64,000 nucleotides of DNA from Sminthopsis crassicaudata. Its lineage: Eukaryota. The notes beneath the pieces were generated by a model. It worked only from the letters and a program-made list of their open reading frames with translations, was not told the DNA's origin and did not search any database. A program made the translations under genes and the position numbers. The stretch is from assembly GCF_048593235.1 (NCBI RefSeq), contig NC_133621.1, positions 92,991,148 to 93,055,147 on the forward strand. The letters run 5' to 3'. The first letter of the stretch is position 1. Each line of letters begins with the position of its first letter. This document shows positions 2,757 to 56,103 of this stretch, piece after piece.

Positions 2757-2774
2757 GGGGAAAAACTGGTGTGT

Positions 2775-2819
<45 letters not shown>

Positions 2820-2852
2820 CTACGTGTGCATTTGTATAGCAGGGGAAAAACT

Positions 2853-2902
<50 letters not shown>

Positions 2903-2933
2903 TGTGTACCTACGTGTGCATTTGTATAGCAGG
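2757..2933. repeat. Tandem duplication of a (TG)n microsatellite with its flanks
   Basis: GGGGAAAAACTGG-(TG)n-TACCTACGTGTGCATTTGTATAGCAGG occurs twice with different TG tracts. Confidence 0.92.
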
Positions 2934-3964: not shown

Positions 3965-4197
3965 TCTCTCCTTCCTCTCTCTTTTCTTCTCCCTTTCCCT
4001 CTCTCTCCCCTTCTCCTTCTTCCTCTTCCTCCTACTCATTCTCTTTTTTCCCTCTTTTTCTCTCTTTTCCTCTCCTCCCTATCCCTCTCCTCTCCCTCTG
4101 TCACTGTCTCTCTGTCTCTTTCTGTCTCTTTATCTCTGTCTCTGTCTCTCCCTCCTTTTCTCTCTCCCTCTCTCTTTCTCTCTACCTCCCTCTCTCT
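3965..4197. repeat. CT-rich polypyrimidine low-complexity tract
   Basis: Almost exclusively C/T on the + strand. Confidence 0.9.
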
Positions 4198-4438: not shown

Positions 4439-4695
4439 NNNNNNNNNNNNNNNNNNNNNNNNNNNNNNNNNNNNNNNNNNNNNNNNNNNNNNNNNNNNNN
4501 NNNNNNNNNNNNNNNNNNNNNNNNNNNNNNNNNNNNNNNNNNNNNNNNNNNNNNNNNNNNNNNNNNNNNNNNNNNNNNNNNNNNNNNNNNNNNNNNNNNN
4601 NNNNNNNNNNNNNNNNNNNNNNNNNNNNNNNNNNNNNNNNNNNNNNNNNNNNNNNNNNNNNNNNNNNNNNNNNNNNNNNNNNNNNNNNNNNNNNN
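4439..4695. other. Assembly gap (N run)
   Basis: Run of N. Confidence 1.

Positions 4696-5047: not shown

Positions 5048-5103
<56 letters not shown>
5048..5103. repeat. (CA)n microsatellite
   Basis: Direct reading. Confidence 0.97.
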
Positions 5104-8857: not shown

Positions 8858-8904
<47 letters not shown>

Positions 8905-9759: not shown

Positions 9760-9888
9760 NNNNNNNNNNNNNNNNNNNNNNNNNNNNNNNNNNNNNNNNN
9801 NNNNNNNNNNNNNNNNNNNNNNNNNNNNNNNNNNNNNNNNNNNNNNNNNNNNNNNNNNNNNNNNNNNNNNNNNNNNNNNNNNNNNNNN
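9760..9888. other. Assembly gap (N run)
   Basis: Run of N. Confidence 1.
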
Positions 9889-16600: not shown

Positions 16601-17328
16601 CAAGCAGCTGGTATAAATTATCAGAATTAATATTACTTTTACAAAGAACTAAAATTTTAGTTTTTTTTTTCTTTCATAATAAAAGCAAGTGATATGTGAT
16701 AGTTTGCAAATAGGCTTATATTTCAATCAATTCTCACAATAATCCTATGAGGTCCATGATGCAGATATTCCTATTTCCATATGACAGATAAGGAAATTGA
16801 GCCAGGTAAGTGACTTGTTCAAGCCAATCTGGTAAATGAGAGAGTAACACTCAAAATCAGGTCTTTTGACTCTCTAAACTCCTACTTTTAAAAATTATAC
16901 TATACTGTTTGCTTGTTATTTTTCTAATAGTTAAAAATCAACATAATACTTTTCTTTTTTTATCATGTGCAACTTAATCCCTAGCACACATGTACCCAGG
17001 TGCACTGTCACTCACAAATTTGATTGAATAGGACTTCCCCTATATTCTCCAAATCACTTGGAGAATCTTAGAAGTAGCCTTGGATGCATTTGACTATCAG
17101 ATGCAGTTGGGAGGAATGGAGAAATCTTCCTAACATTTATAATTGACCTAAAGTAAAATGAGCTGCTTCAAGTACTAGTGACTTTTTTTTTTTAATCTCT
17201 GAGGGTTTTCAAACAGAAATTGGATGACCATGCTTTTGTGATTTTCAGTCACAGTTTAAACCAGATGACTTTGAATGTACTTTCCAACTCCTGAGATTTT
17301 GTGATTCTGTGGATGTGAGTAGAGAAAG

Positions 17329-17780
17329 TGTTAGGATTACTAGGTGAGAACTCAGGTTGTCTGGACAGTGATAAGGTGAGAATTCAGGTTGTCTGGACAA
17401 TTACAAGGTGAGAACTCAGGTTGACTTGACAGTTCTCTGGCTCAGACCTTTGGTTTGGGCCTTTAAAGGGAGTTTACATGTTAGGAATTCTAAGAGGAGC
17501 AAGTTCATTGGTTGGAGTACTTCTTCCCAGAAGCCCTTGCATTATCCCATGCCCATTCTCTAGGAGGATAAAAAGAGGCAACATTGAGCCTGGAGAGCAG
17601 TCTGGACTGGGGAAGGACAAGAGCTGGAGGAGATTCAGAGCCAGGATTCAGGAAGAAGAAGAGGCTGGCTGGAGGCTCCAGAAGCCTCCCAAGAAACCTG
17701 CTCATAGAGGAAAAGATTATACAGAAAAGAAACCTTCTCCCAGAGAAGGATTACAACTGAGAGACAATCAGAACATTACA
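17329..17780 (+). mobile_element. ERV LTR (class II/betaretrovirus-like), left arm of an inverted LTR pair
   Basis: Begins TGTTAGG and ends TTACA. Contains 32-bp U3 tandem repeats, a reverse CCAAT (ATTGG ~17508) and a TATA-like GGATAAAAAG (~17566). Followed after 2 nt by a tRNA-Lys PBS; preceded by AGAAAG (17323-17328). Confidence 0.92.
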
Positions 17781-17782
17781 AT

Positions 17783-17800
17783 TGGCGCCCAATGTGGGGC
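17783..17800 (+). other. Retroviral primer-binding site, tRNA-Lys1,2 (CUU)
   Basis: TGGCGCCCAATGTGGGGC is a 17/18 match to the complement of the tRNA-Lys(CUU) 3' end (TGGCGCCCAACGTGGGGC); the single difference is a CpG>TpG change. Confidence 0.93.
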
Positions 17801-17806
17801 GCCAAT

Positions 17807-18273
17807 TATAATGTGCTGTTTTCTCCAGAAGCTGCTGATCGCTCTCTGGGAAGAGATCTGCTGTGTCAACTCAAATTTCTCAGACAGATTCTTCTTCCTG
17901 TAGAGAGCCCTTGTCTCCAGACAGTTGCCGTTAACTCTTGTCCAGAGAAGTGACTTCCCTTCCTGCAGAGAGCCGCGTCAAGCCTGATGTAGAGCAGAGA
18001 CTTCTTCTCTCTCTGGAGTGCTGTCCTCTTTTATCCTCCCAGAGAATGGGCATGGGATAATGCAAGGGCTTCTGGGAAGAAGTACTCCAACCAATGAACT
18101 TGCTCCTCTTAGAATTCCTAACATGTAAACTCCCTTTAAAGGCCCAAACCAAAGGTCTGAGCCAGAGAACTGTCAAGTCAACCTAAGTTCTCACCTTGTA
18201 ATTGTCCAGACAACCTGAATTCTCACCTTATCACTGTCCAGACAACCTGAGTTCTCACCTAGTAATCCTAACA
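17807..18273 (-). mobile_element. ERV LTR, right arm, inverted relative to 17329-17780
   Basis: The reverse complement of 18025-18273 equals 17329-17578 except for 2 substitutions and 1 indel. On the minus strand it ends ACATTATA-AT-TGGCGCCC. Followed by AGAAAG (18274-18279), the TSD. Confidence 0.92.
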
Positions 18274-18841
18274 AGAAAGAGTGACCTAGTGAGGTATCAA
18301 AGGCTGGGGAAACTCTGAGTCTCAAATCTGTTCTCTTGGGTGGGCAAGTGCATGATTTCCATGCTATCAAAATAGGACAAAGTAGTGAGTGATATGGAGG
18401 AGAGAATAGAAAGCTAGGTGGAACAGCATGTGGAGTGCTAGTCCTGGAGTGAGGAAAACCTAAATTCAGATCCAGCTTTGGACATTTATTTGTAGTGTCA
18501 CTTTGATCAAGGTATTTTATCTTTCTGTCTCAGTTTTCTCAACTTTAAAATGAGAATAATCCATGCCCTCATTTTTCTTTAGGAAAGTCTCTATCCTACA
18601 TGACCACAAACACATGCCCTGACCTGGAAGAATGAAACTCCTTTAGAAGTCTATGATTCTATAATTCCTGGGGCTGCAGGGATTTGGAGCTAAAATTAGG
18701 GACAGGCAGGATAGAGGTAGAGAGAAGAATGGATGTCACAACAGAGATTAAGGGTATAGTCTGGCTAAGAAGATAAGTAAAAGAATGCATAATCTAAATT
18801 AGATTTAGAGCTTGAAGCCACTTTAGACATATTCTGGTCCA

Positions 18842-38400: not shown

Positions 38401-39867
38401 AGCTAGAAGGATAACACTTGGATGGGAGTCAGCTTGGTACAATGGAAAAAGTAGTATTCAACCAAGAAATACCAATGAACTTTATGTGATCTTGAGCAAG
38501 TTGCAACTTTTTTGGACCTCAGATTTCTTCATCTGTAAAATGTAGGTATTAAACCAGATTACTTTAAATGTCCCTTCCAATATTATGATTTTAGGACGCA
38601 AAGAGGTAAATCGAAATAAGGAGACATTTCTTAACAATTAGAACTATTTGAGAACACAATAAATTTCCTGAAGAAAATGAGTTCCTTTGTATTTGAAGGC
38701 ATTAGGCAAAGTTTGACCGACCTTTTGTCAGAAATGTTGCATTTTTTTTTAAATGTATGAGTTGGCATTCATGTTCAGCAAGGTCCCTTCCAAACCCCAA
38801 ATTATATAATGAACCACATTTTTGACTTAATTTTGATATAGAATGGTAGTGGACTCTGTCTAATATTTTGTTATAGTTTCTTAGCCAATAAAATTAATGA
38901 CATGAAATAAATTATGTTGTAAAATAAAAATACAATGTTTTAAAAAGTTACAAGAGAAAAATCAGAAAGAATGTATTTTTTTCTTTTTTCTTCAATCACC
39001 TTAGATTCCCCCGAGGAAATAGATAACTAAATTTAGGGACATTTGGCATGCAGAGTCTAGACTTCATTTAAAATAATAAGTAATTTAATTTTATGAGGGT
39101 TTTTGCCATCTCAGTTTGCATAAAAGAAAAGGCTTTTTTTGTAGAGAGGAATTTTTGGTTTGCTGAGCTTGCATTAATTTCTATTACATTAAGTAATGAA
39201 TCAATACTGCAAAGGAGACAAAATAATGAAAAATATGTTTACTACTTTTTAAATTTATGGTTAAGATGATGATGTATTTTTATAGATGATAATATATTTT
39301 TATGGCTTTTACATAGGGAAGGAATTGAGAGAAAAAAAAAGATTTCATTTGGATGCTATTTCAATGTACATTGACCAAATAAAAAAAGATGACTTCTAGA
39401 AAAAAAATGTCATAGCTAAGATATCCACTAAATATGCTGAGACCTTGTCTATATGATAATTGGTAGAAAAGTAAACATTTCAGTTAACTAATTAACACAC
39501 AGTTAAACAATTAATCATGTATTTGATCTGTAGCATTTTTGTTTTACAGATCAGAGAAAATTTAAGTGGTAAGGGATCTTAGTAGAATATCAAGCTTTCA
39601 TTTAACAGATAAGAAAACTGAAGCAAAAAAAAGCATAGTGATTTTCCCCGATAGTCACATAGACAGTTAGTAGTAGGACTGAAATGATTAGAATCTAGCT
39701 TTCTTGACTCTTTAAATTCAGGGTTCCTTTTCTATTATACTAGCTTGCCTACTGATTTTTTAAATTTATTTTTATTTACTTGATTAGCTAAATTCGTTCA
39801 TAGGATCATAGATGTGAACTTGAAGAAAGTTTTGTTTCATTCTATTTCATTTTATTATTTTATCTTT

Positions 39868-49588: not shown

Positions 49589-51059
49589 TCAACTAACCAC
49601 AATGGTAGTTGGGCAAAAGACATAGAGTTCATCATTGAAGTCTATCCTCAAAATTTTTCTAAGTATGCTGTTAGCCTAGCCTTTGAAAACCCAAGGCTAT
49701 TTCCTTGACGATAATGAGACATATGGTCGATGTGGAGCAAACACACCAATTAAAATGATTTAAAAACACTTTGGAACTGTAACACTAAATAGCAGCAACA
49801 ACTCAATTAATTGGCAGCATCCTTGTCAATATGGGGAGGAATATTTTCTTTTATATTTTGTCTTCCCATTGAAAAACCCATGTCCTTGAAGTTTCTTTGA
49901 GAGGCTCCTATCAACAAAAAAAAGGGGCCCTCTCAGAGACATGAGCATAGAACAAGAGTATGGAGGGGAAGAAGGAGAAACTGCTACTTCTATTTCCCTG
50001 AATCATTTTTTTTGTCTAGTGGATCAAAGGAGAGTTCTATGAGATGTGAGAGAGTAAAGCCTACATATTTCAGTATTGCAAAAAATATAGCCATAAGGCT
50101 TATCATCTTATCATCTTACATATATTTGCAACTCTGTTCTAGAATCTCATTCTTTGTCTTCATGGATACTTCTGTCCTTCATCCTTTAGGACTTCTTCAG
50201 GCCTTTAGCTTTGCTCTGGACACACTTTTTTCTCTCCAAACTCAATCCCTTGGTGAATCTTATACTTTGCTCTATTCCTGAATGACTTGTTTTTCTTCTC
50301 CTGTTATTTTTTGTTTTTATTCTCTCCTTATGCCTTTTCCTCAAGTGGGACTTAATGGAACAAGAGAAAGTTATTAAATTGCACTAACTGGATCCACTAC
50401 AGATTCATAAATGTTGAATAAACATTAAGTGCTTACAATGTATGAAGCATTGTTTTAAGTGTTGGGACCACACATACAAAACCCAACCGGTCCCTGCCTT
50501 GAAGGAGTTTACATTCAAATAGGGAGATAGCATATATTGAGCATGATGTATGAGGGGGATGAAGTTTGAATTAAAAAATCACAAGGATGGCGAGTGAAAT
50601 CATGGGGAGGTAATGCTACACTTATTCTGGTTACAAAGATTGCATTTCTTTGATAATGTTATGATCTTAAATGGGCCTTCCCTACAGGAAGATAATCCAA
50701 GTCTTCCTCTTTATTGTTCTTTATTTCATTCACTACGATGGCTGTTCCAAACCTTCTTTTCTCAAGCTAGTTACAGAATTCCCTTTCCCCAGTGTTTCAA
50801 CTGAGAATCTCACTTCACTGATAAAAATGAATGGCATTCGTCTCAAGCTCTTTTGTCGTCCATTCTCCTCATCACACAACTTTTTGAAATTGTCCCCCTT
50901 CCTTTACCTGTATTTCCCACTTTACATTAGTTTTTGACAAAGTGATATTTTTTCTCTGCATCACAACCAATCCATTTATAAGAATCTCAGCAGATTTTAT
51001 CACCATCACTCCACTTTTTAAAAATTATATTCAATTTCTATCTACTGATCTCTTCTATG

Positions 51060-51410
51060 GAGATGCTCAAGTCTCCCTCATCCTTAAAAACTTGCTTTAG
51101 ACTCTATTGCCTTATAAGCTATTGTCTTATATCTTCTTGAAAGAATTATTCCATTCAATGAATCCACTTACTCACCTCTCATTCTCATCTAAATCCTTTG
51201 CAATCTGACTTTGACCTCATCATTTAACTGAAACTGCTCTATTCAAAGTGACCTGTGAAATTGTTGACCATTATGGCCTTTTCTCAGTCCTCATCCTTCT
51301 TGAGCTTTTTGGAACATATGATAAAACTGAGCATCTCCTCTCTCCATATTAGGATTTTGTGACAATGCTCGATTGATTCTCTGCTGATCTGATCACTTTT
51401 CAGTCTCCTT
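51060..51410 (+). mobile_element. L2 LINE reverse transcriptase fragment
   Basis: CCTTTGCAATCTGACTTTGACCTCATCATTTAACTGAAACTGCTC..AAAGTGACC matches the L2 'PLQSGFRPHHSTETAL.KVT' motif, followed by 'FSVLILLDLS'. Confidence 0.8.
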
Positions 51411-51744
51411 TATCCTTTGATAAATTATCATATATAATTTAGGGTCAAAAGGTCACATCTGTCAAAGCCACATCTATTTGGGCTTTGTCCTGTGGGTTGC
51501 TGAATGAAATCATAAAACTAACAATCTGGATTTGAAGCCAATAAGAATCCATTAGATTCACAACAAACATTTATTTTTTCTACCCCCACCCCATCTCAGG
51601 AGGAACCAGGGGAGTTTACAAAGAGTGTGGACTTTAATTTTCAACTTTTAGCTCAAATAGAAAGTGGCAGAGCCAGGATTCAAGTCCAGAATTTCTCTAA
51701 GTTCCTGAGAACTTTCTATTATGCTTTATTAAATTAATGTTTCT

Positions 51745-51967
51745 TTTTTTTAATTATAAATTTTTTGACAATATATATGCATGAGTAATTTTTTTATAAC
51801 ATTATCCCTTGTATTCGTTTTTCCAAATTATCCTCTCCCTCTCTCTATTCCCTCCCCTAGATGACAGGTAATCCCATACATTTTACATGTGTTGCAGTGT
51901 AACCTAGATACAATATATGTGTGTAAATCCAATTTTCTTGTTGCACGTTAAGTATTAGATTCCAAAG
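51745..51967 (-). mobile_element. Relatively young L1 3'UTR fragment
   Basis: T tail followed by the reverse complement of a marsupial L1 3' end (CCCTCCCCTAGATGACAGGTAATCCCATACAT...). Confidence 0.78.
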
Positions 51968-53039
51968 ATAGACAGTAGTGCTAATATAAATTAATGTTTC
52001 TATAACTACTGTGAAATTTCTTTTTTTCCTTAAATTTTTTTCTTTATTGATCGGTATTAAGAAAATACTGAAATATTTTAGAAATTCAAAATATAACTGT
52101 CTTCTCATAAAAGAGGAAATTATCATTTTATTTCTACTTTTGGTTTCATCTTTGAAAATCTTTGAAATCAGAGGTAATGGAGAGATAAATGTTCATTTCA
52201 TTGAAGAGGGTAATGATATTATTACAAGTGGAAGTTACTGAGACATAAATATGTAAGAGGCAATGGGTAATGAGTAATCTTTCTATTACTTTCTTAAAAG
52301 AGGACTGACCTCTAATTTTTAGACAATGACCTAATTTTCTTCTCTACCTTTATTCCAATAATGTTGAGCATCATTGGAACAACTTTTCATGTACTACAAA
52401 TTGAAGGCTTTTGGGCTAGATGATCTCTGAGTTCCTATGAGTGTGACAGTTTATGAGTCTTTCTCTTTCTCATTAAGGATAATCCTTGTACAGTACTTTG
52501 ATCACATTTCTTTGTCCCTCAAAGACCTTACTTCAGATATCCTCCCCTGTCTCTCATGAACTTTCAGCCTTTCATTTTCACTGAAGGCTTCATACTTGCC
52601 TTGGGTATCTACCCAGATTTCCCAATAATAAGCAAAGTATTTTACACAGAGACAAAAAGATGCGAGTTCAAATTCTGCCTCAGTTATTTACTAGATATGT
52701 GATTAAGTTACTTGAATTCTCATTTTCAATTTCTTCTGTAAAATAGGGATAATTTCATCTGCATTCTGGCTATCTTCTTCCTTCTTCTTATACCAGAACT
52801 CAAGACTTGGATTTCTTGGCTAGAGACTAGGCCATCATACCACTTCCTGGCCATTTCCAAGCCAGGGAGCCTCATGTATACCCTTTACTTCTAGTCCTAC
52901 ATTTGGTGAATTTTTCTCCATTTGAATGATAGTTCCTTGATGACAAGGTTTGTATTGCTTCCATTTGTATTCCCTATATTCAGCAGAATGACTGGCACAT
53001 TTTAGGTGTACAATAAATACTCTCCCATTCACTTATTCT

Positions 53040-53460
53040 TGATCTTTCTTGTTTTCCTTTTCATTTCTAGATTTTTTGAAAAACTTAGCTGATGCTTCTT
53101 CCTTACTTTCACAAACCTCTTGAAGTCTGGATTTTATTTTTTATTATCGCAGTGAATTTTTTTCCCCAGAAGTCACTAGTAACTTCCTAATTACTGTTTT
53201 TGGCCTTCATTTTCCTTAAAGTTTCTGCATTTTTTTTTGATGCTATTGACCACTGCCTTTTCTAATTTTGTATACTTTCTTCATTTACCTTTAGAGGCAT
53301 CATACTATTATTCTGAAAATTCTTTCCAAATTCCCTTGATGCAGATGTTCCTCTGGATCTGCTTTATCCCTCTTCTGTTCTCTTATATTCTCTCTCTGTA
53401 AGCTTGTTTACCCTGTGACTTTAACTACTATATTATTGAGATGGCTCCCATTCCATTCCA
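53040..53460 (+). mobile_element. L2 LINE fragment
   Basis: Same RT region as 51060-51410, more decayed (GAAGTCACTAGTAACTTCCTAATT...TTTGATGCTATTGACCACT). Confidence 0.65.
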
Positions 53461-53999
53461 GCCCTGATCTCTCTTATTCCCTTATAAATTTAGTGTTGGA
53501 AGGGAACTCAAAGGCCATTTAGTCCAACCACTCATCTACTGAACAGCTCTAAAAAAGACCAGCAAGGCTCTTTTTGAGTATTGCCAGCAACAGTGAGCTA
53601 ATTACTCATAGTGTAAGCAGCCCATTCCATAGCTGGACAGCTCGATTTGTTAGAAATGTATTCTTTCTGTTGAAACACTACCTGTTTTCCTTTAGCTTCC
53701 CACTCATCCATCTTAGCCCTGCCCTCTGGAACAAAAGAGAAAAGTCTTCCTGACTACAGCTCTTCAAGCACAGAAGGATGGCACTCATATTTTCTTCCTT
53801 TTGACTCTTCTCTGGGCTAAGCTTTCCTAGTTACTTTATCCATTCATTATATGACATTTCCCCAGACCATCCATCATCTTGTCTCCACTTCTCTATGTTC
53901 ACTCTAGTTTGTCTATATTCCTCTTAGTATGAAATGTGGCAACAGGAACAGAGCACAATATTTTAGACAGCATCTACTCATGGTAAGTAATGGTAAAAA

Positions 54000-54560
54000 T
54001 ATTCCTTTTTCTTCACTCACTCCATTCTCTAAAGCTTATCTTTTTAATTCATCCAAATTCAGCTTTGGCCTCAAAATGTTATAGAAACTATTTCCAAAGA
54101 TAACCAATGGCATCCTTTCCAATTCCATTCAGTGACTTTTTCTAATTATTAATTCTTCATGAATTTTCATTAGCATTGGATGATGTCAACCATACATTTT
54201 TATTTTAAAATATATTTTATTTTTTTTAGCTCTCTCTTTATATTGGGTATAATAATACTATATATAGCCTCACAATTTTTATCTCATCTCTTCTCCTAAT
54301 TTCTTCATTGTTAACTTGTCTTTCCCCCAACCCTTATGTGAGATTACTTTCAGCTGAATCCTCTGGAATCATTCTTTTTCTTTATATACATTTCCTTGGC
54401 AAGTCAATTCATTTTTATTGCTTTAATTTCTCTAATGACATTTCTCTGATGATATCAGTTCTACCACTTTCCTTATTAATTCTTCTCATAAACATCTATT
54501 TCAAAATGTTTCCACATAGCATGGATATCTCCACTACTCTTTGTGTAATCCTCATGTTCC
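54000..54560 (+). mobile_element. L2 LINE fragment
   Basis: AAACTATTTCCAAAGATAACCAATGGCATCC...CATTGGATGATGTCAACCAT, continuing into 3' L2-like sequence. Confidence 0.62.
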
Positions 54561-54984
54561 TTTTATTGGAGATTAAGATGTTTCATTACTTTCAGTCATA
54601 CAAAAACATCAGAATAATAGTGATGTTAAAAAGATAGATTTTTGTTTCAGAGATAAGTTTGATGTTTTAAAGGCAAACAACAACAACAACAACAATAACA
54701 AAAAACTCCAAAATGTGATAGTTTCCTGAAGGTAATCCAATATTTTTCAATTATAGTCATAATTTACTGTTTATCTCCTGTCAAGATATCTGTATTTATC
54801 TTCATATTCATATATGTTCATATATTTATACAAACATCTAGATACATACTTGGATGAGTTCTATAGTTTGTCTATTCTATAGTATACCATAAGTCTAAAA
54901 AATGGGCAATTATCCTCCATTTGGTTTTTTTCTTTGTGGATAGTTAGACCAAACTCCTTAAAGTGATTATGAATCTAATTTTTA

Positions 54985-55295
54985 TAATAACTTTTTATTT
55001 TTCCAAATATATGCAAAGATAGTTTTCAATATTCACCTTTGCAATTTTGCGTTTCACATTTTCTCCCTCCCTTCCTCCTCCCACTACCCTAGATAGCAAG
55101 CAATCCGGTATAGGTTAAACATGTTCATTTTTCTAAACACATTTCCATATTCATCATGCTGTCCAAGAAATATCAGAGCAAAAGAGGAAAAACATAAAGA
55201 AGAAAAAAAACAAGCAAACAAATAACTATACCAACAAATAGAGGTGAAAATACTATCCTTTGGTCCACATTCAGTCTCCATAGTTCTATCTATGA
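54985..55295 (-). mobile_element. L1 3'UTR fragment
   Basis: Homologous to 20937-21112 (GCAAAGATAGTTTTCAATATTCACCTTTGCAA). Confidence 0.8.
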
Positions 55296-56103
55296 GTCTA
55301 ACTTAAGAGGCTTTAAAATGTGCTGGTCTTTAAGACAATGAGTACAATTCTGCTTTCAAATAAAGCAATTTGAGGACCTCATCAGCTATAGGGAATATCT
55401 TGTTAAATTGAACTCTGAGGTCTGTCTCTTCCATAATGATAATGAGCAGATTTTGGCTTCTTTTATGTTTCATTTAATACTTTTTTGTTGAGGGTCATTG
55501 ATCAAGGACATTTCTATTGCTATATGTTTCAAGAAATATTGCATTATTTTGGCATAGGTTCATCACAGTTATGTAAGACTGAAAACTATGGGATAGTCAC
55601 ATGTCACACGTCAGAATAACACATGAGCTTTACTGGTTGCCTTGTGATGCCAAGAGAAATCTAGCGCATCACCCTCTGTGTGAACTGAGGTAAGAATATA
55701 GGCAAGAAACAAAAAGAATAAGCAGATATAGATAAATTTCAACCTGTATAAGTAGAGGTAATAGCTATACAGATAACATTCGTTTGAATATTTGGACTTT
55801 ATTATTTTAGTTCCCCAAACAACCCCAAATCCAAATAATTTTAATTGTTTCTTTTAACTTTAGTCAATTTCAAGTTCCATTTATCCTTCAAGTACTATAT
55901 AAAAGACTAGCCATTATTAAATATAATATTCCAAATGGGAACATATTCTAAATGTAAATCATTTAATTTACTGATGATAATTTATATTGTGTTGTATTCT
56001 TAGTACTTTATGGTATATAAACTTTGCCCAGAAGAATAGAGAAACTAGAATAAAATATTTGTATTTTAAAATTTAGCTTATAGGAAATTTCTTTTTCTGA
56101 AGG

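What the first reader, a model, noticed from the sequence alone, without database searches (positions are those of the whole stretch)
17323..18279. Integrated head-to-head double-LTR palindrome with two U3 ends and a 6-bp TSD
Seen: a 945-bp unit TG-LTR(+)-AT-PBS-AT-LTR(-)-CA with no gag/pol/env or other internal DNA, bounded by identical AGAAAG hexamers. Established: proviruses have LTRs as direct repeats, with one U3 and one U5 end, and decay to solo LTRs; a 6-bp TSD and a tRNA-Lys1,2 PBS fit class II/betaretrovirus-like ERVs. Inference: the whole palindrome was inserted in one integrase-catalysed event using two U3 att ends, so it is an aberrant reverse-transcription product that reached the germ line. 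If it recurs genome-wide, it would be a distinct MITE-like, LTR-derived foldback element mobilised by ERV machinery.
Basis: partly seen in the sequence, partly recalled or inferred. Interest (0 to 1): 0.92.

Follow-up and report, generated by a model that had tools for sequence, protein, structure and literature searches.

The report
Head-to-head retroviral LTR pair, one insertion
A gene-less 945-bp insert made of two retroviral LTRs facing each other across one tRNA-Lys primer site looks like a reverse-transcription mishap that was integrated by two "left" virus ends, but its arms match only in part, so it is a single odd relic and not a perfect palindrome.

Summary
The structure is real at 17323-18279. 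A 945-bp unit (TG...CA) sits between two AGAAAG hexamers. Its centre holds an 18-nt site that matches the tRNA-Lys1,2 primer-binding site at 17 of 18 positions. There is no coding DNA.

- The outer ~257 nt (U3-like, with 3x32-bp repeats and a TATA-like box) are 99% identical.
- The next 150 vs 165 nt show no detectable homology.
- The last 45 nt are about 73% alike.

This argues against a fold-back assembly artefact and against simple snap-back on one template.

Best explanation: two plus-strand strong-stop DNAs (U3-R-U5-PBS), copied from two different templates, annealed through the last 14 nt of the Lys1,2 PBS. Those 14 nt are 12/14 self-complementary. Each strand then extended on the other. 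The product has two U3 ends, which integrase inserted with a 6-bp duplication. The predicted register gives exactly the observed 22-nt centre.

Recurrence across the genome, read support and an empty orthologous site could not be tested, because no host-genome data are on hand. The element carries no genes and was found once, so interest is moderate.

The parts
17323..17328 (.). Left copy of the 6-bp target-site duplication (AGAAAG)
   Evidence: Read directly. Identical to 18274-18279. Chance about 4e-4.
17329..17780 (+). Arm A: complete LTR-like unit, 452 nt, in + sense (U3-like module, then R/U5 of type A, ending ...CA)
17329..17585 (+). Arm A U3-like module, shared with arm B at 99% (2 substitutions and 1 single-base indel). 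No CpG at all.
   Evidence: Inverted repeat I1, alignment, blastn 98.8-99.2%, CpG 0 vs 11.6 expected.
17336..17433 (+). Three tandem 32-bp repeats (enhancer-like) in arm A
   Evidence: the repeat finder D1; TRF 17342-17433, period 32, 2.9 copies.
17566..17578 (+). TATA-like box at the inner edge of the shared module; arm identity fades 10-15 nt downstream of it
   Evidence: Reading and alignment; GATAAA hexamer at arm position 239 in both arms. Its role as a promoter is inferred.
17586..17735 (+). Arm A R/U5-proximal segment (type A), purine-rich, unrelated to the matching part of arm B
   Evidence: local alignment no better than dinucleotide shuffles.
17736..17780 (+). Arm A U5-distal 45 nt, about 73% identical to the end of arm B
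   Evidence: z about 6; 0 of 500 shuffles reach the score under two of the three scoring schemes, 3 of 500 under the third.
17783..17800 (+). Primer-binding site, 17/18 to the tRNA-Lys1,2 complement, preceded by the spacer AT (17781-17782)
17783..17804 (.). 22-nt centre: the 18-nt PBS plus 4 nt that are the complement of its own first 4. Symmetry axis between 17793 and 17794. Followed by the spacer AT (17805-17806).
   Evidence: (I6).
17807..18273 (-). Arm B: LTR-like unit, 467 nt, in - sense (U3-like module, then R/U5 of type B)
17852..18016 (-). Arm B R/U5-proximal segment (type B), with a short internal duplication. Together with the adjoining U5-distal segment (counted over 17807-18016) it holds the only 4 CpGs outside the centre.
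   Evidence: (17894-17909 vs 17959-17974).
18017..18273 (-). Arm B U3-like module with its three 32-bp repeats (18169-18266)
18274..18279 (.). Right copy of the 6-bp target-site duplication (AGAAAG)

Best explanation
This is a dead, gene-less relic of one aberrant integration by a class II (betaretrovirus-like, tRNA-Lys1,2-primed) endogenous retrovirus or retrotransposon. Proposed steps follow. (1) Inside one particle, two plus-strand strong-stop DNAs (each U3-R-U5 plus 18 nt copied from the tRNA primer) were made on two different minus-strand templates. The templates had the same U3 but different R/U5, that is, a particle carrying RNAs of two LTR subtypes. (2) Instead of making the normal second jump, the two DNAs annealed to each other 3' end to 3' end, through the last 14 nt of the Lys1,2 PBS. 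These 14 nt are nearly self-complementary: 12 of 14, as 4+4+4 bp with both 3' ends paired. (3) Each 3' end was extended on the other strand. The result is a blunt duplex, U3-R-U5(A)-AT-[22-nt centre]-AT-U5-R(B)-U3 inverted, in which both termini are ordinary U3 ends. (4) Integrase joined the two U3 ends to the chromosome in a concerted reaction, leaving the 6-bp duplication. (5) The two mismatched positions in the centre were resolved in favour of the arm-A strand. The insert then drifted: one transition in the PBS, and 2 substitutions plus 1 indel between the U3 copies. Shown by the sequence: the anatomy, the duplication, the PBS identity, the mosaic arms, and the fit of the centre to the PBS self-pairing register. 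Inferred: steps 1-5 as events, and the two-subtype particle. The insert probably does nothing today. Its two promoter-like modules point inwards, so any transcription would converge on the centre (inference only).
For: - Both outer ends are the same U3 start (TG...), with identical flanking hexamers.
- Each arm ends with ...A, then AT, then PBS letters, so each arm is a 5'-LTR-plus-PBS unit, which is what strong-stop plus DNA is.
- The PBS is 17/18 to Lys1,2.
- The tRNA-derived 18-mer alone has a 14-nt 3' overlap with 12 paired positions and 4 paired at the very end. The Lys3 and Ile PBSs printed in the same table have no such overlap; the Met PBS has only a weaker one (14-nt overlap, 8 paired positions, 3 at the end). 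Only 1.6% of composition-matched shuffles have one.
- The predicted DNA homodimer uses that register (-15.0 kcal/mol). After extension it gives PBS + 4 nt = 22 nt, which is exactly 17783-17804, with the axis at 17793/17794. The best monomer hairpin uses another register and would give a 20-nt centre.
- Arms that are 99% identical in U3 but unalignable in R/U5 fit two templates, and the switch lies 10-15 nt past the TATA-like box, near where U3 meets R.
- 6-bp duplications and Lys PBSs are reported for an active class II ERV of cattle (PMC10924933).
- Use of the second co-packaged genome by plus strong-stop DNA is already invoked for HIV-1 proviruses with unequal LTRs (PMC9278108).
- Dasyurid genomes are reported to hold thousands of recently active, recombining class II ERVs (PMC11334065).
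Against: - This is one locus only. There are no reads, no orthologous empty site and no other family members, so neither the reality of the assembly nor the existence of LTR subtypes 'U3+A' and 'U3+B' could be checked.
- The pairing model was built after seeing the centre, so the exact fit is not an independent test. Only the self-complementarity of the tRNA-derived 18-mer is independent.
- A 4-bp snap-back in the same register would give the same centre.
- Two LTR subtypes that are 99% alike in U3 yet unalignable in R/U5 is an added assumption.
- Some integrases are reported to disfavour U3 ends (HTLV-1, HIV-1, SIV; PMC6705210).
- U3/R/U5 borders are inferred from a TATA-like box alone, and no canonical poly(A) hexamer was found in either arm.
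Confidence: 0.6

Rival explanations
1. Snap-back on one template, with later change. A single plus strong-stop DNA folded back on its own PBS (4-bp stem, 6-nt loop), copied itself into a perfect palindrome and was integrated by two U3 ends. Later the inner part of one arm was replaced by ectopic gene conversion from another LTR, or by repair of a broken palindrome centre.
For: It gives the same 22-nt centre if the 4-bp register is used. It gives the same two U3 ends and the same duplication. From general knowledge, long perfect palindromes are unstable in mammalian cells, so secondary change is expected.
Against: The best-scoring monomer hairpin uses a different register and predicts a 20-nt centre. 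A conversion tract replacing about 210 nt would have only 12-22 nt of homology on its centre side. The centre itself is intact and symmetric, which is unlike centre-break repair.
Confidence: 0.12
2. Assembly artefact. A fold-back or chimeric read, or a wrong join between two loci, created the inverted pair.
For: Inverted duplications are a known artefact of long-read libraries (general knowledge). No read data could be examined here.
Against: A fold-back artefact gives identical arms, but here about 150-165 nt per arm are unrelated and the arms differ in length (452 vs 467 nt). A wrong join of two loci would not give matching flanking hexamers (about 4e-4), nor a junction exactly on the symmetry axis of the PBS.
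Confidence: 0.08
3. Two separate insertions plus deletions. Two related proviruses in opposite orientation landed next to or inside each other, and deletions removed everything between the two 5' LTR-PBS units. The flanking hexamers match by chance.
For: Nested and neighbouring ERV insertions are common, and the arms do differ in R/U5.
Against: It needs a chance 6-bp match at exactly the two ends (about 4e-4). It also needs a deletion whose ends fall symmetrically within the two PBSs, leaving no internal or host DNA. The 99% identical U3 copies would be a coincidence.
Confidence: 0.05
4. Member of a propagating fold-back family. The unit (257-bp inverted ends, a 431-bp unique middle (17586-18016), 6-bp duplication) is a repeated non-autonomous element that is moved as such by retroviral-type integrase machinery.
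For: Formally it has long terminal inverted repeats, TG...CA ends and a duplication. The unequal middle would then simply be 'internal sequence'.
Against: There is no second copy in 64 kb or in the scanned collections. Retroviral integrases do not excise integrated DNA (general knowledge). An RNA copy would lack the terminal direct repeats needed for the strand transfers. The near-perfect tRNA PBS on the symmetry axis is explained by formation, not by function.
Confidence: 0.05

Closest known systems
Solo LTRs and proviruses of class II (betaretrovirus-like, 'ERVK'-type) endogenous retroviruses, e.g. cattle ERVK[2-1-LTR] (PMC10924933) and the dasyurid MEBrv clades (PMC11334065)
   Same: TG...CA ends, U3 with tandem repeats and a TATA-like box, a PBS for tRNA-Lys two bases after the LTR, a 6-bp target duplication, and LTR size (452 and 467 nt here; 453 and 469 nt are reported for MEBrv 1 and MEBrv 3).
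   Different: The LTRs are inverted, not direct. Both outer ends are U3. There is no internal region, no polypurine tract and no genes. The two LTRs differ in R/U5. Sequence relatedness to any named LTR family could not be tested.
[quoted passage not shown]
   Same: An aberrant provirus whose two LTRs differ because plus strong-stop DNA paired with a partner other than its own minus strand. It was still integrated with a normal duplication.
   Different: There the LTRs stay direct and the provirus keeps internal sequence. Here the partner is another plus strong-stop DNA, giving an inverted, gene-less dimer.
Concerted integration of donors carrying two copies of the same viral end in test-tube integrase assays (general knowledge; end preferences discussed in PMC6705210 and PMC5027509)
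   Same: Two like ends joined to a target with the virus-specific spacing.
   Different: Those are laboratory substrates. This would be a natural, inherited example using two U3 ends.
Palindromic LTR-LTR junction of 2-LTR circles (PMC1905944, PMC1180852)
   Same: Two LTR copies abut in an unintegrated by-product of reverse transcription.
   Different: In circles U5 meets U3 and the LTRs are direct repeats. Here PBS meets PBS, the LTRs are inverted and the product is linear and integrated.
DIRS-type retrotransposons (PMC7192593, PMC3950715)
   Same: Retroelement with inverted terminal repeats.
   Different: DIRS elements encode a tyrosine recombinase, have an internal complementary region and make no target duplication. 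None of this applies here.

Membership tests
Class II (betaretrovirus-like) ERV LTR | LTR bounded by TG...CA with short inverted termini | tested here: met
   Both arms start TGT. Arm A ends ACA. The inner end of arm B differs from the canonical dinucleotide by one base.
Class II (betaretrovirus-like) ERV LTR | PBS complementary to the 3' end of tRNA-Lys, next to the 5' LTR | tested here: met
   17783-17800 is 17/18 to the Lys1,2 PBS and 13/18 to Lys3 as printed in PMC1084362.
Class II (betaretrovirus-like) ERV LTR | 6-bp target-site duplication | tested here: met
   AGAAAG on both sides. 6 bp is reported for cattle ERVK.
Class II (betaretrovirus-like) ERV LTR | Class II placement of pol / reverse transcriptase | not testable with these tools
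   The unit has no internal region, and no retroviral ORF occurs anywhere in the window.
Class II (betaretrovirus-like) ERV LTR | Sequence similarity of the LTR to a named LTR family (Repbase/Dfam, MEBrv clades) | not testable with these tools
   No repeat library or host genome is on hand. Scans of the viral and metagenome collections found nothing. Only the LTR lengths agree with MEBrv 1 and 3, which is a lead, not a test.
Canonical provirus | Two LTRs as direct repeats, one U3 and one U5 outer end, internal gag-pol | tested here: not met
   The LTRs are inverted, both outer ends are U3, and 26 bp lie between the LTRs.
Solo LTR | A single LTR between the duplicated target | tested here: not met
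   There are two LTR units and a PBS between the hexamers.
Perfect palindrome / fold-back copy of one LTR | Arms complementary over their whole length | tested here: not met
   150 vs 165 nt per arm show no homology, and the arms are 452 vs 467 nt.
Fold-back / MITE-like repeated element | Many copies with the same structure, each with its own duplication | tested here: inconclusive
   There is no second copy in 64 kb.
DIRS-like retrotransposon | Inverted repeats with an internal complementary region, a tyrosine recombinase and no target duplication | tested here: not met
   A duplication is present and there is no coding capacity.
2-LTR circle junction | U5 end abutting U3 end | tested here: not met
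   The junction is PBS to PBS and the U3 ends face outwards.

The most novel reading that the evidence does not exclude
Head-to-head LTR-PBS-LTR dimers may be a regular by-product of every retroelement primed by tRNA-Lys1,2. The tRNA-copied end of plus strong-stop DNA is nearly self-complementary, and two U3 ends suffice for integration in the germ line. On this reading such dimers form a so far unlisted class of insertions in genomes with active class II ERVs. Mixed-arm dimers like this one would be the survivors, because perfect palindromes are lost. Their inward-facing promoters could yield double-stranded RNA against the parent family.
Probability: 0.15. Interest if true: 0.8.

Novelty: new variant of a known kind. 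Interest (0 to 1): 0.5.

Why it matters
If the locus is real, it is a natural, inherited record of two things usually seen only in test tubes or inferred. The first is integrase joining two U3 ends in a concerted reaction. The second is plus-strand strong-stop DNA pairing with something other than its own minus strand. It also yields a simple prediction that can be tested by sequence alone. The tRNA-Lys1,2 primer site is nearly self-complementary at its 3' end, so Lys1,2-primed elements should leave such dimers more often than elements using other primers, and always with a 22-nt centre. The mosaic arms would further show that RNAs of two LTR subtypes shared one particle. In practice, such units confuse LTR annotation and dating tools, which expect direct repeats. 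As it stands this is one gene-less relic with no sign of function.

Tried and rejected
**Searches for other copies or independent assemblies**
- blastn of every part and of both flanks against the window found nothing beyond the element itself.
- Exact look-ups of the two longest ORFs that cross the element were not on record.
- A protein search with the 141-aa ORF gave no hits.
- A full HMMER search with the 81-aa ORF gave one hit, P0001. It is a tandem-repeat pseudo-protein and was judged spurious.
- Exact-pattern scans of the metagenome collection (2 of 2) and the viral collection (2 scans) with U3 and 32-bp-repeat patterns gave zero hits.

**Other negative checks**
- No tRNA gene and no Rfam family occur in the window.
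- No coding ORFs or retroviral genes occur nearby.
- A paralogous empty-site test failed because the flanks are not part of a repeat seen elsewhere in the window.

**Literature**
- Searches for a described head-to-head LTR-PBS-LTR integrant found none. They cover open-access papers only and prove no absence.

**Ideas rejected**
- Inversion of a 3' LTR: arm B carries PBS letters, which a 3' LTR does not.
- The stretch right of the PBS being leader sequence: the similarity of its reverse complement to the U5 end runs for about 55 nt, which is homology, not a stem.
- A Polinton-like or other DNA transposon: the tRNA PBS and LTR features speak against it.

1. The PBS letters used later come from the window and from PMC1084362.
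2. In one search my script built and printed 36-nt strings that join 18 nt of an arm's U5 end to the tRNA-complementary 18-mer from that paper. I did not save or reuse them. The conclusion rests on the 18-mers alone and on the window as it stands.
3. The output and my second note give the place and kind of the single PBS mismatch.
Full report
**1. Observation**

Reading 17200-18400 shows AGAAAG at 17323-17328 and again at 18274-18279. Between them lies a 945-bp unit that starts TG and ends CA.

The repeat finder reports:
- one long inverted repeat, 17329-17573 against 18029-18273 (245 nt, 99% complementary);
- three tandem 32-bp repeats inside each of these arms (also TRF);
- a 25-nt inverted pair around the centre (17766-17790 / 17797-17821, 88%).

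Nothing else in the 64-kb window resembles any part of the unit. For the window's base composition, the chance that the six bases on either side of fixed boundaries agree is about 4e-4.

**2.

Arm A is 17329-17796 (+). Arm B is 17791-18273 (-). Aligning them shows three zones:
- The arms are identical, apart from two substitutions and one single-base indel, up to a TATA-like box at 17566-17578.
- Similarity fades over the next 10-15 nt and is then lost.
- It returns only in the last few dozen bases before the centre.

Local alignments with three scoring schemes and dinucleotide shuffles give these results:
- 17586-17735 against the reverse complement of 17852-18016 scores no better than chance (z 0.07 to 1.6), and the direct orientation does no better.
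- The last 45 nt of each arm are clearly related (z about 6, about 73% identity).

The arms are 452 and 467 nt long. The unit is thus a mosaic with four parts: a shared U3-like module (257 nt, 99%), unrelated R/U5-proximal segments, a related U5 tip, and a common AT spacer plus PBS start. As single-stranded DNA it would still fold into a ~245-bp stem plus a small central hairpin (-395 kcal/mol, z -39). But it is not a palindrome throughout.

**3. Retroviral identity**

- A paper's table (PMC1084362) prints the 18-nt PBSs complementary to tRNA-Lys1,2 and tRNA-Lys3. Window 17783-17800 matches the first at 17/18 and the second at 13/18. No other site in the window reaches 16/18 on either strand.
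- The PBS lies two bases (AT) after the ...CA end of arm A.
- Arm B, read on the minus strand, also ends, then has AT, then the first eight PBS letters.
- The single PBS mismatch is a transition of the kind that methylated-CpG decay gives.
- A Lys PBS and a 6-bp duplication are reported together for an active class II ERV of cattle (PMC10924933).
- The unit has no gag, pro, pol or env, so there are no genes to count as broken.
- The longest ORF (141 aa, 17478-17903) runs from U3 through the centre into the antisense of arm B and has no relatives.
- The surrounding window has no coding-like ORFs, no tRNA genes and no Rfam matches.

**4. How it most likely arose**

Each arm is a 5' LTR with PBS letters attached. 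[quoted passage not shown]

Evidence from the PBS alone:
- The 18-mer printed for Lys1,2 has a property that the Lys3 and Ile 18-mers in the same table lack and the Met 18-mer shows only weakly (8 of 14 positions paired, 3 at the end). Its last 14 nt are 12/14 self-complementary, with four paired bases at the very 3' end.
- Only 1.6% of composition-matched shuffles do as well.

Evidence from folding with DNA parameters:
- Two strands ending in this PBS are predicted to pair 3' end to 3' end as 4+4+4 bp (-15.0 kcal/mol).
- Extending each 3' end on the other strand from that register yields PBS plus four more bases. This is a 22-nt centre flanked by AT on both sides, with the symmetry axis in the middle of the 14-mer.
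- That is exactly 17783-17804, with the axis at 17793/17794.
- The best single-strand hairpin uses another register and would give a 20-nt centre.

The product has an ordinary U3 end at each terminus, so a concerted integrase reaction would give TG...CA flanked by the family's 6-bp duplication, as seen.

Two pairing strands need not come from the same template. The model therefore also allows the arms to differ. The point where they start to differ lies close to where U3 should meet R, which is the point where sequences copied from the 3' and the 5' ends of the RNA are joined during reverse transcription.

The simplest added assumption is a particle holding RNAs of two LTR subtypes with the same U3. 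Two published findings make this plausible:
- Use of the second co-packaged genome by plus strong-stop DNA has been proposed for HIV-1 proviruses with unequal LTRs (PMC9278108).
Their LTRs are 453 nt (MEBrv 1) and 469 nt (MEBrv 3) (PMC11334065). The agreement in length is a lead only.

**5. Age and state**

The U3 copies differ at 2 of about 256 aligned sites plus one indel. With usual mammalian neutral rates (general knowledge) this means a few million years at most, with a wide error. It is less if the copies differed at the start and more if they have converted each other.

Both U3 modules and the type-A segment have no CpG at all, where 11-12 are expected. The inner part of arm B, between the centre and its U3 module (17807-18016), keeps four. 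The source lineage was therefore already CpG-poor.

Nothing suggests a present function. The two promoter-like modules face inwards, so any transcripts would converge (inference).

**6. Rivals**

- **Snap-back of one strand followed by replacement of part of one arm.** This fits the ends and, in a 4-bp register, the centre. But it needs a conversion tract with almost no homology on its centre side, and the best-scoring hairpin register is a different one.
- **Assembly artefact.** A fold-back artefact would give identical arms. A wrong join would not give matching hexamers or a junction on the PBS axis. Still, no reads could be examined.
- **Two insertions plus deletions.** This needs a chance duplication and a symmetric deletion.
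- **A propagating fold-back family.** This is not excluded, but it has no support in the window or in the scanned collections and no plausible copying route.
- **Host end-joining.** The joining of the two strong-stop DNAs could also have been done by host end-joining through the same 14-nt overlap, not by reverse transcriptase. The sequence cannot tell these apart.

**7. Comparison and novelty**

By its parts the unit belongs with class II ERV LTRs: ends, PBS and duplication were tested and met, while pol and LTR family are not testable here. It is not a provirus, a solo LTR, a 2-LTR-circle junction, a DIRS element or a perfect palindrome; each of these was tested and not met.

My open-access literature searches found no described integrated LTR-PBS-LTR head-to-head dimer. 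This is not proof that none exists.

I rate it a new variant of a known kind, namely an aberrant retroviral integrant. It has a neat, testable mechanistic reading but rests on one unverified locus without function, so interest is about 0.5.

**8. Limits and slips**

No host genome, read set or repeat library was available.

The slips are stated under 'tried and rejected':
- 36-nt hypothetical precursor ends built and printed, neither saved nor reused;
- the place of the PBS mismatch printed and in a note.

Noticed in passing
window 4439-4695 and 9760-9888: Two runs of N (257 and 129 bases). Left as they are. The long 'ORFs' listed across them are artefacts of the Ns.
   Followed up: no
window 17478-17903 (+): A 141-aa ATG ORF, among the longest in the window. 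It runs from U3 of arm A through the PBS into the antisense of arm B. It has no homologues and no record in the collections, so it is a chance ORF in purine-rich sequence.
   Followed up: yes
P0001: The only hit of the 81-aa U3/R ORF in 1.84 billion representatives is a 424-aa protein made of about seven tandem ~58-aa repeats (34% identity, six stretches). It looks like a translated satellite and a spurious match.
   Followed up: partly
window 17807-18016 (arm B inner part): Arm B holds a short internal duplication (17894-17909 vs 17959-17974, 15/16 identical, about 65 nt apart). It also keeps 4 CpGs, whereas arm A's inner part and both U3 modules have none.
   Followed up: partly
window 17329-17780 and 17807-18273: The arm lengths of 452 and 467 nt are close to the LTR lengths published for the dasyurid clades MEBrv 1 (453) and MEBrv 3 (469) in PMC11334065. 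Sequence comparison was not possible, so this is a coincidence or a lead.
   Followed up: partly
window 2757-2933, 5049-5103, 8860-8903, 4059-4197: Microsatellites: a (GT)n tract inside a 90-bp duplication, perfect (AC)27 and (CA)22 tracts, and a CT-rich tract next to the first N run.
   Followed up: no
window 50001-56000: A stretch with marked strand asymmetry (GC skew about -0.18, AT skew down to -0.18), unlike its neighbours. Possibly a large interspersed repeat in one orientation.
   Followed up: no
window 17256-17287 vs 38549-38580: The left flank, just upstream of the insertion, shares a 32-nt stretch (88%) with another place in the window, which suggests a short interspersed repeat. It is too short for a paralogous empty-site test.
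   Followed up: partly
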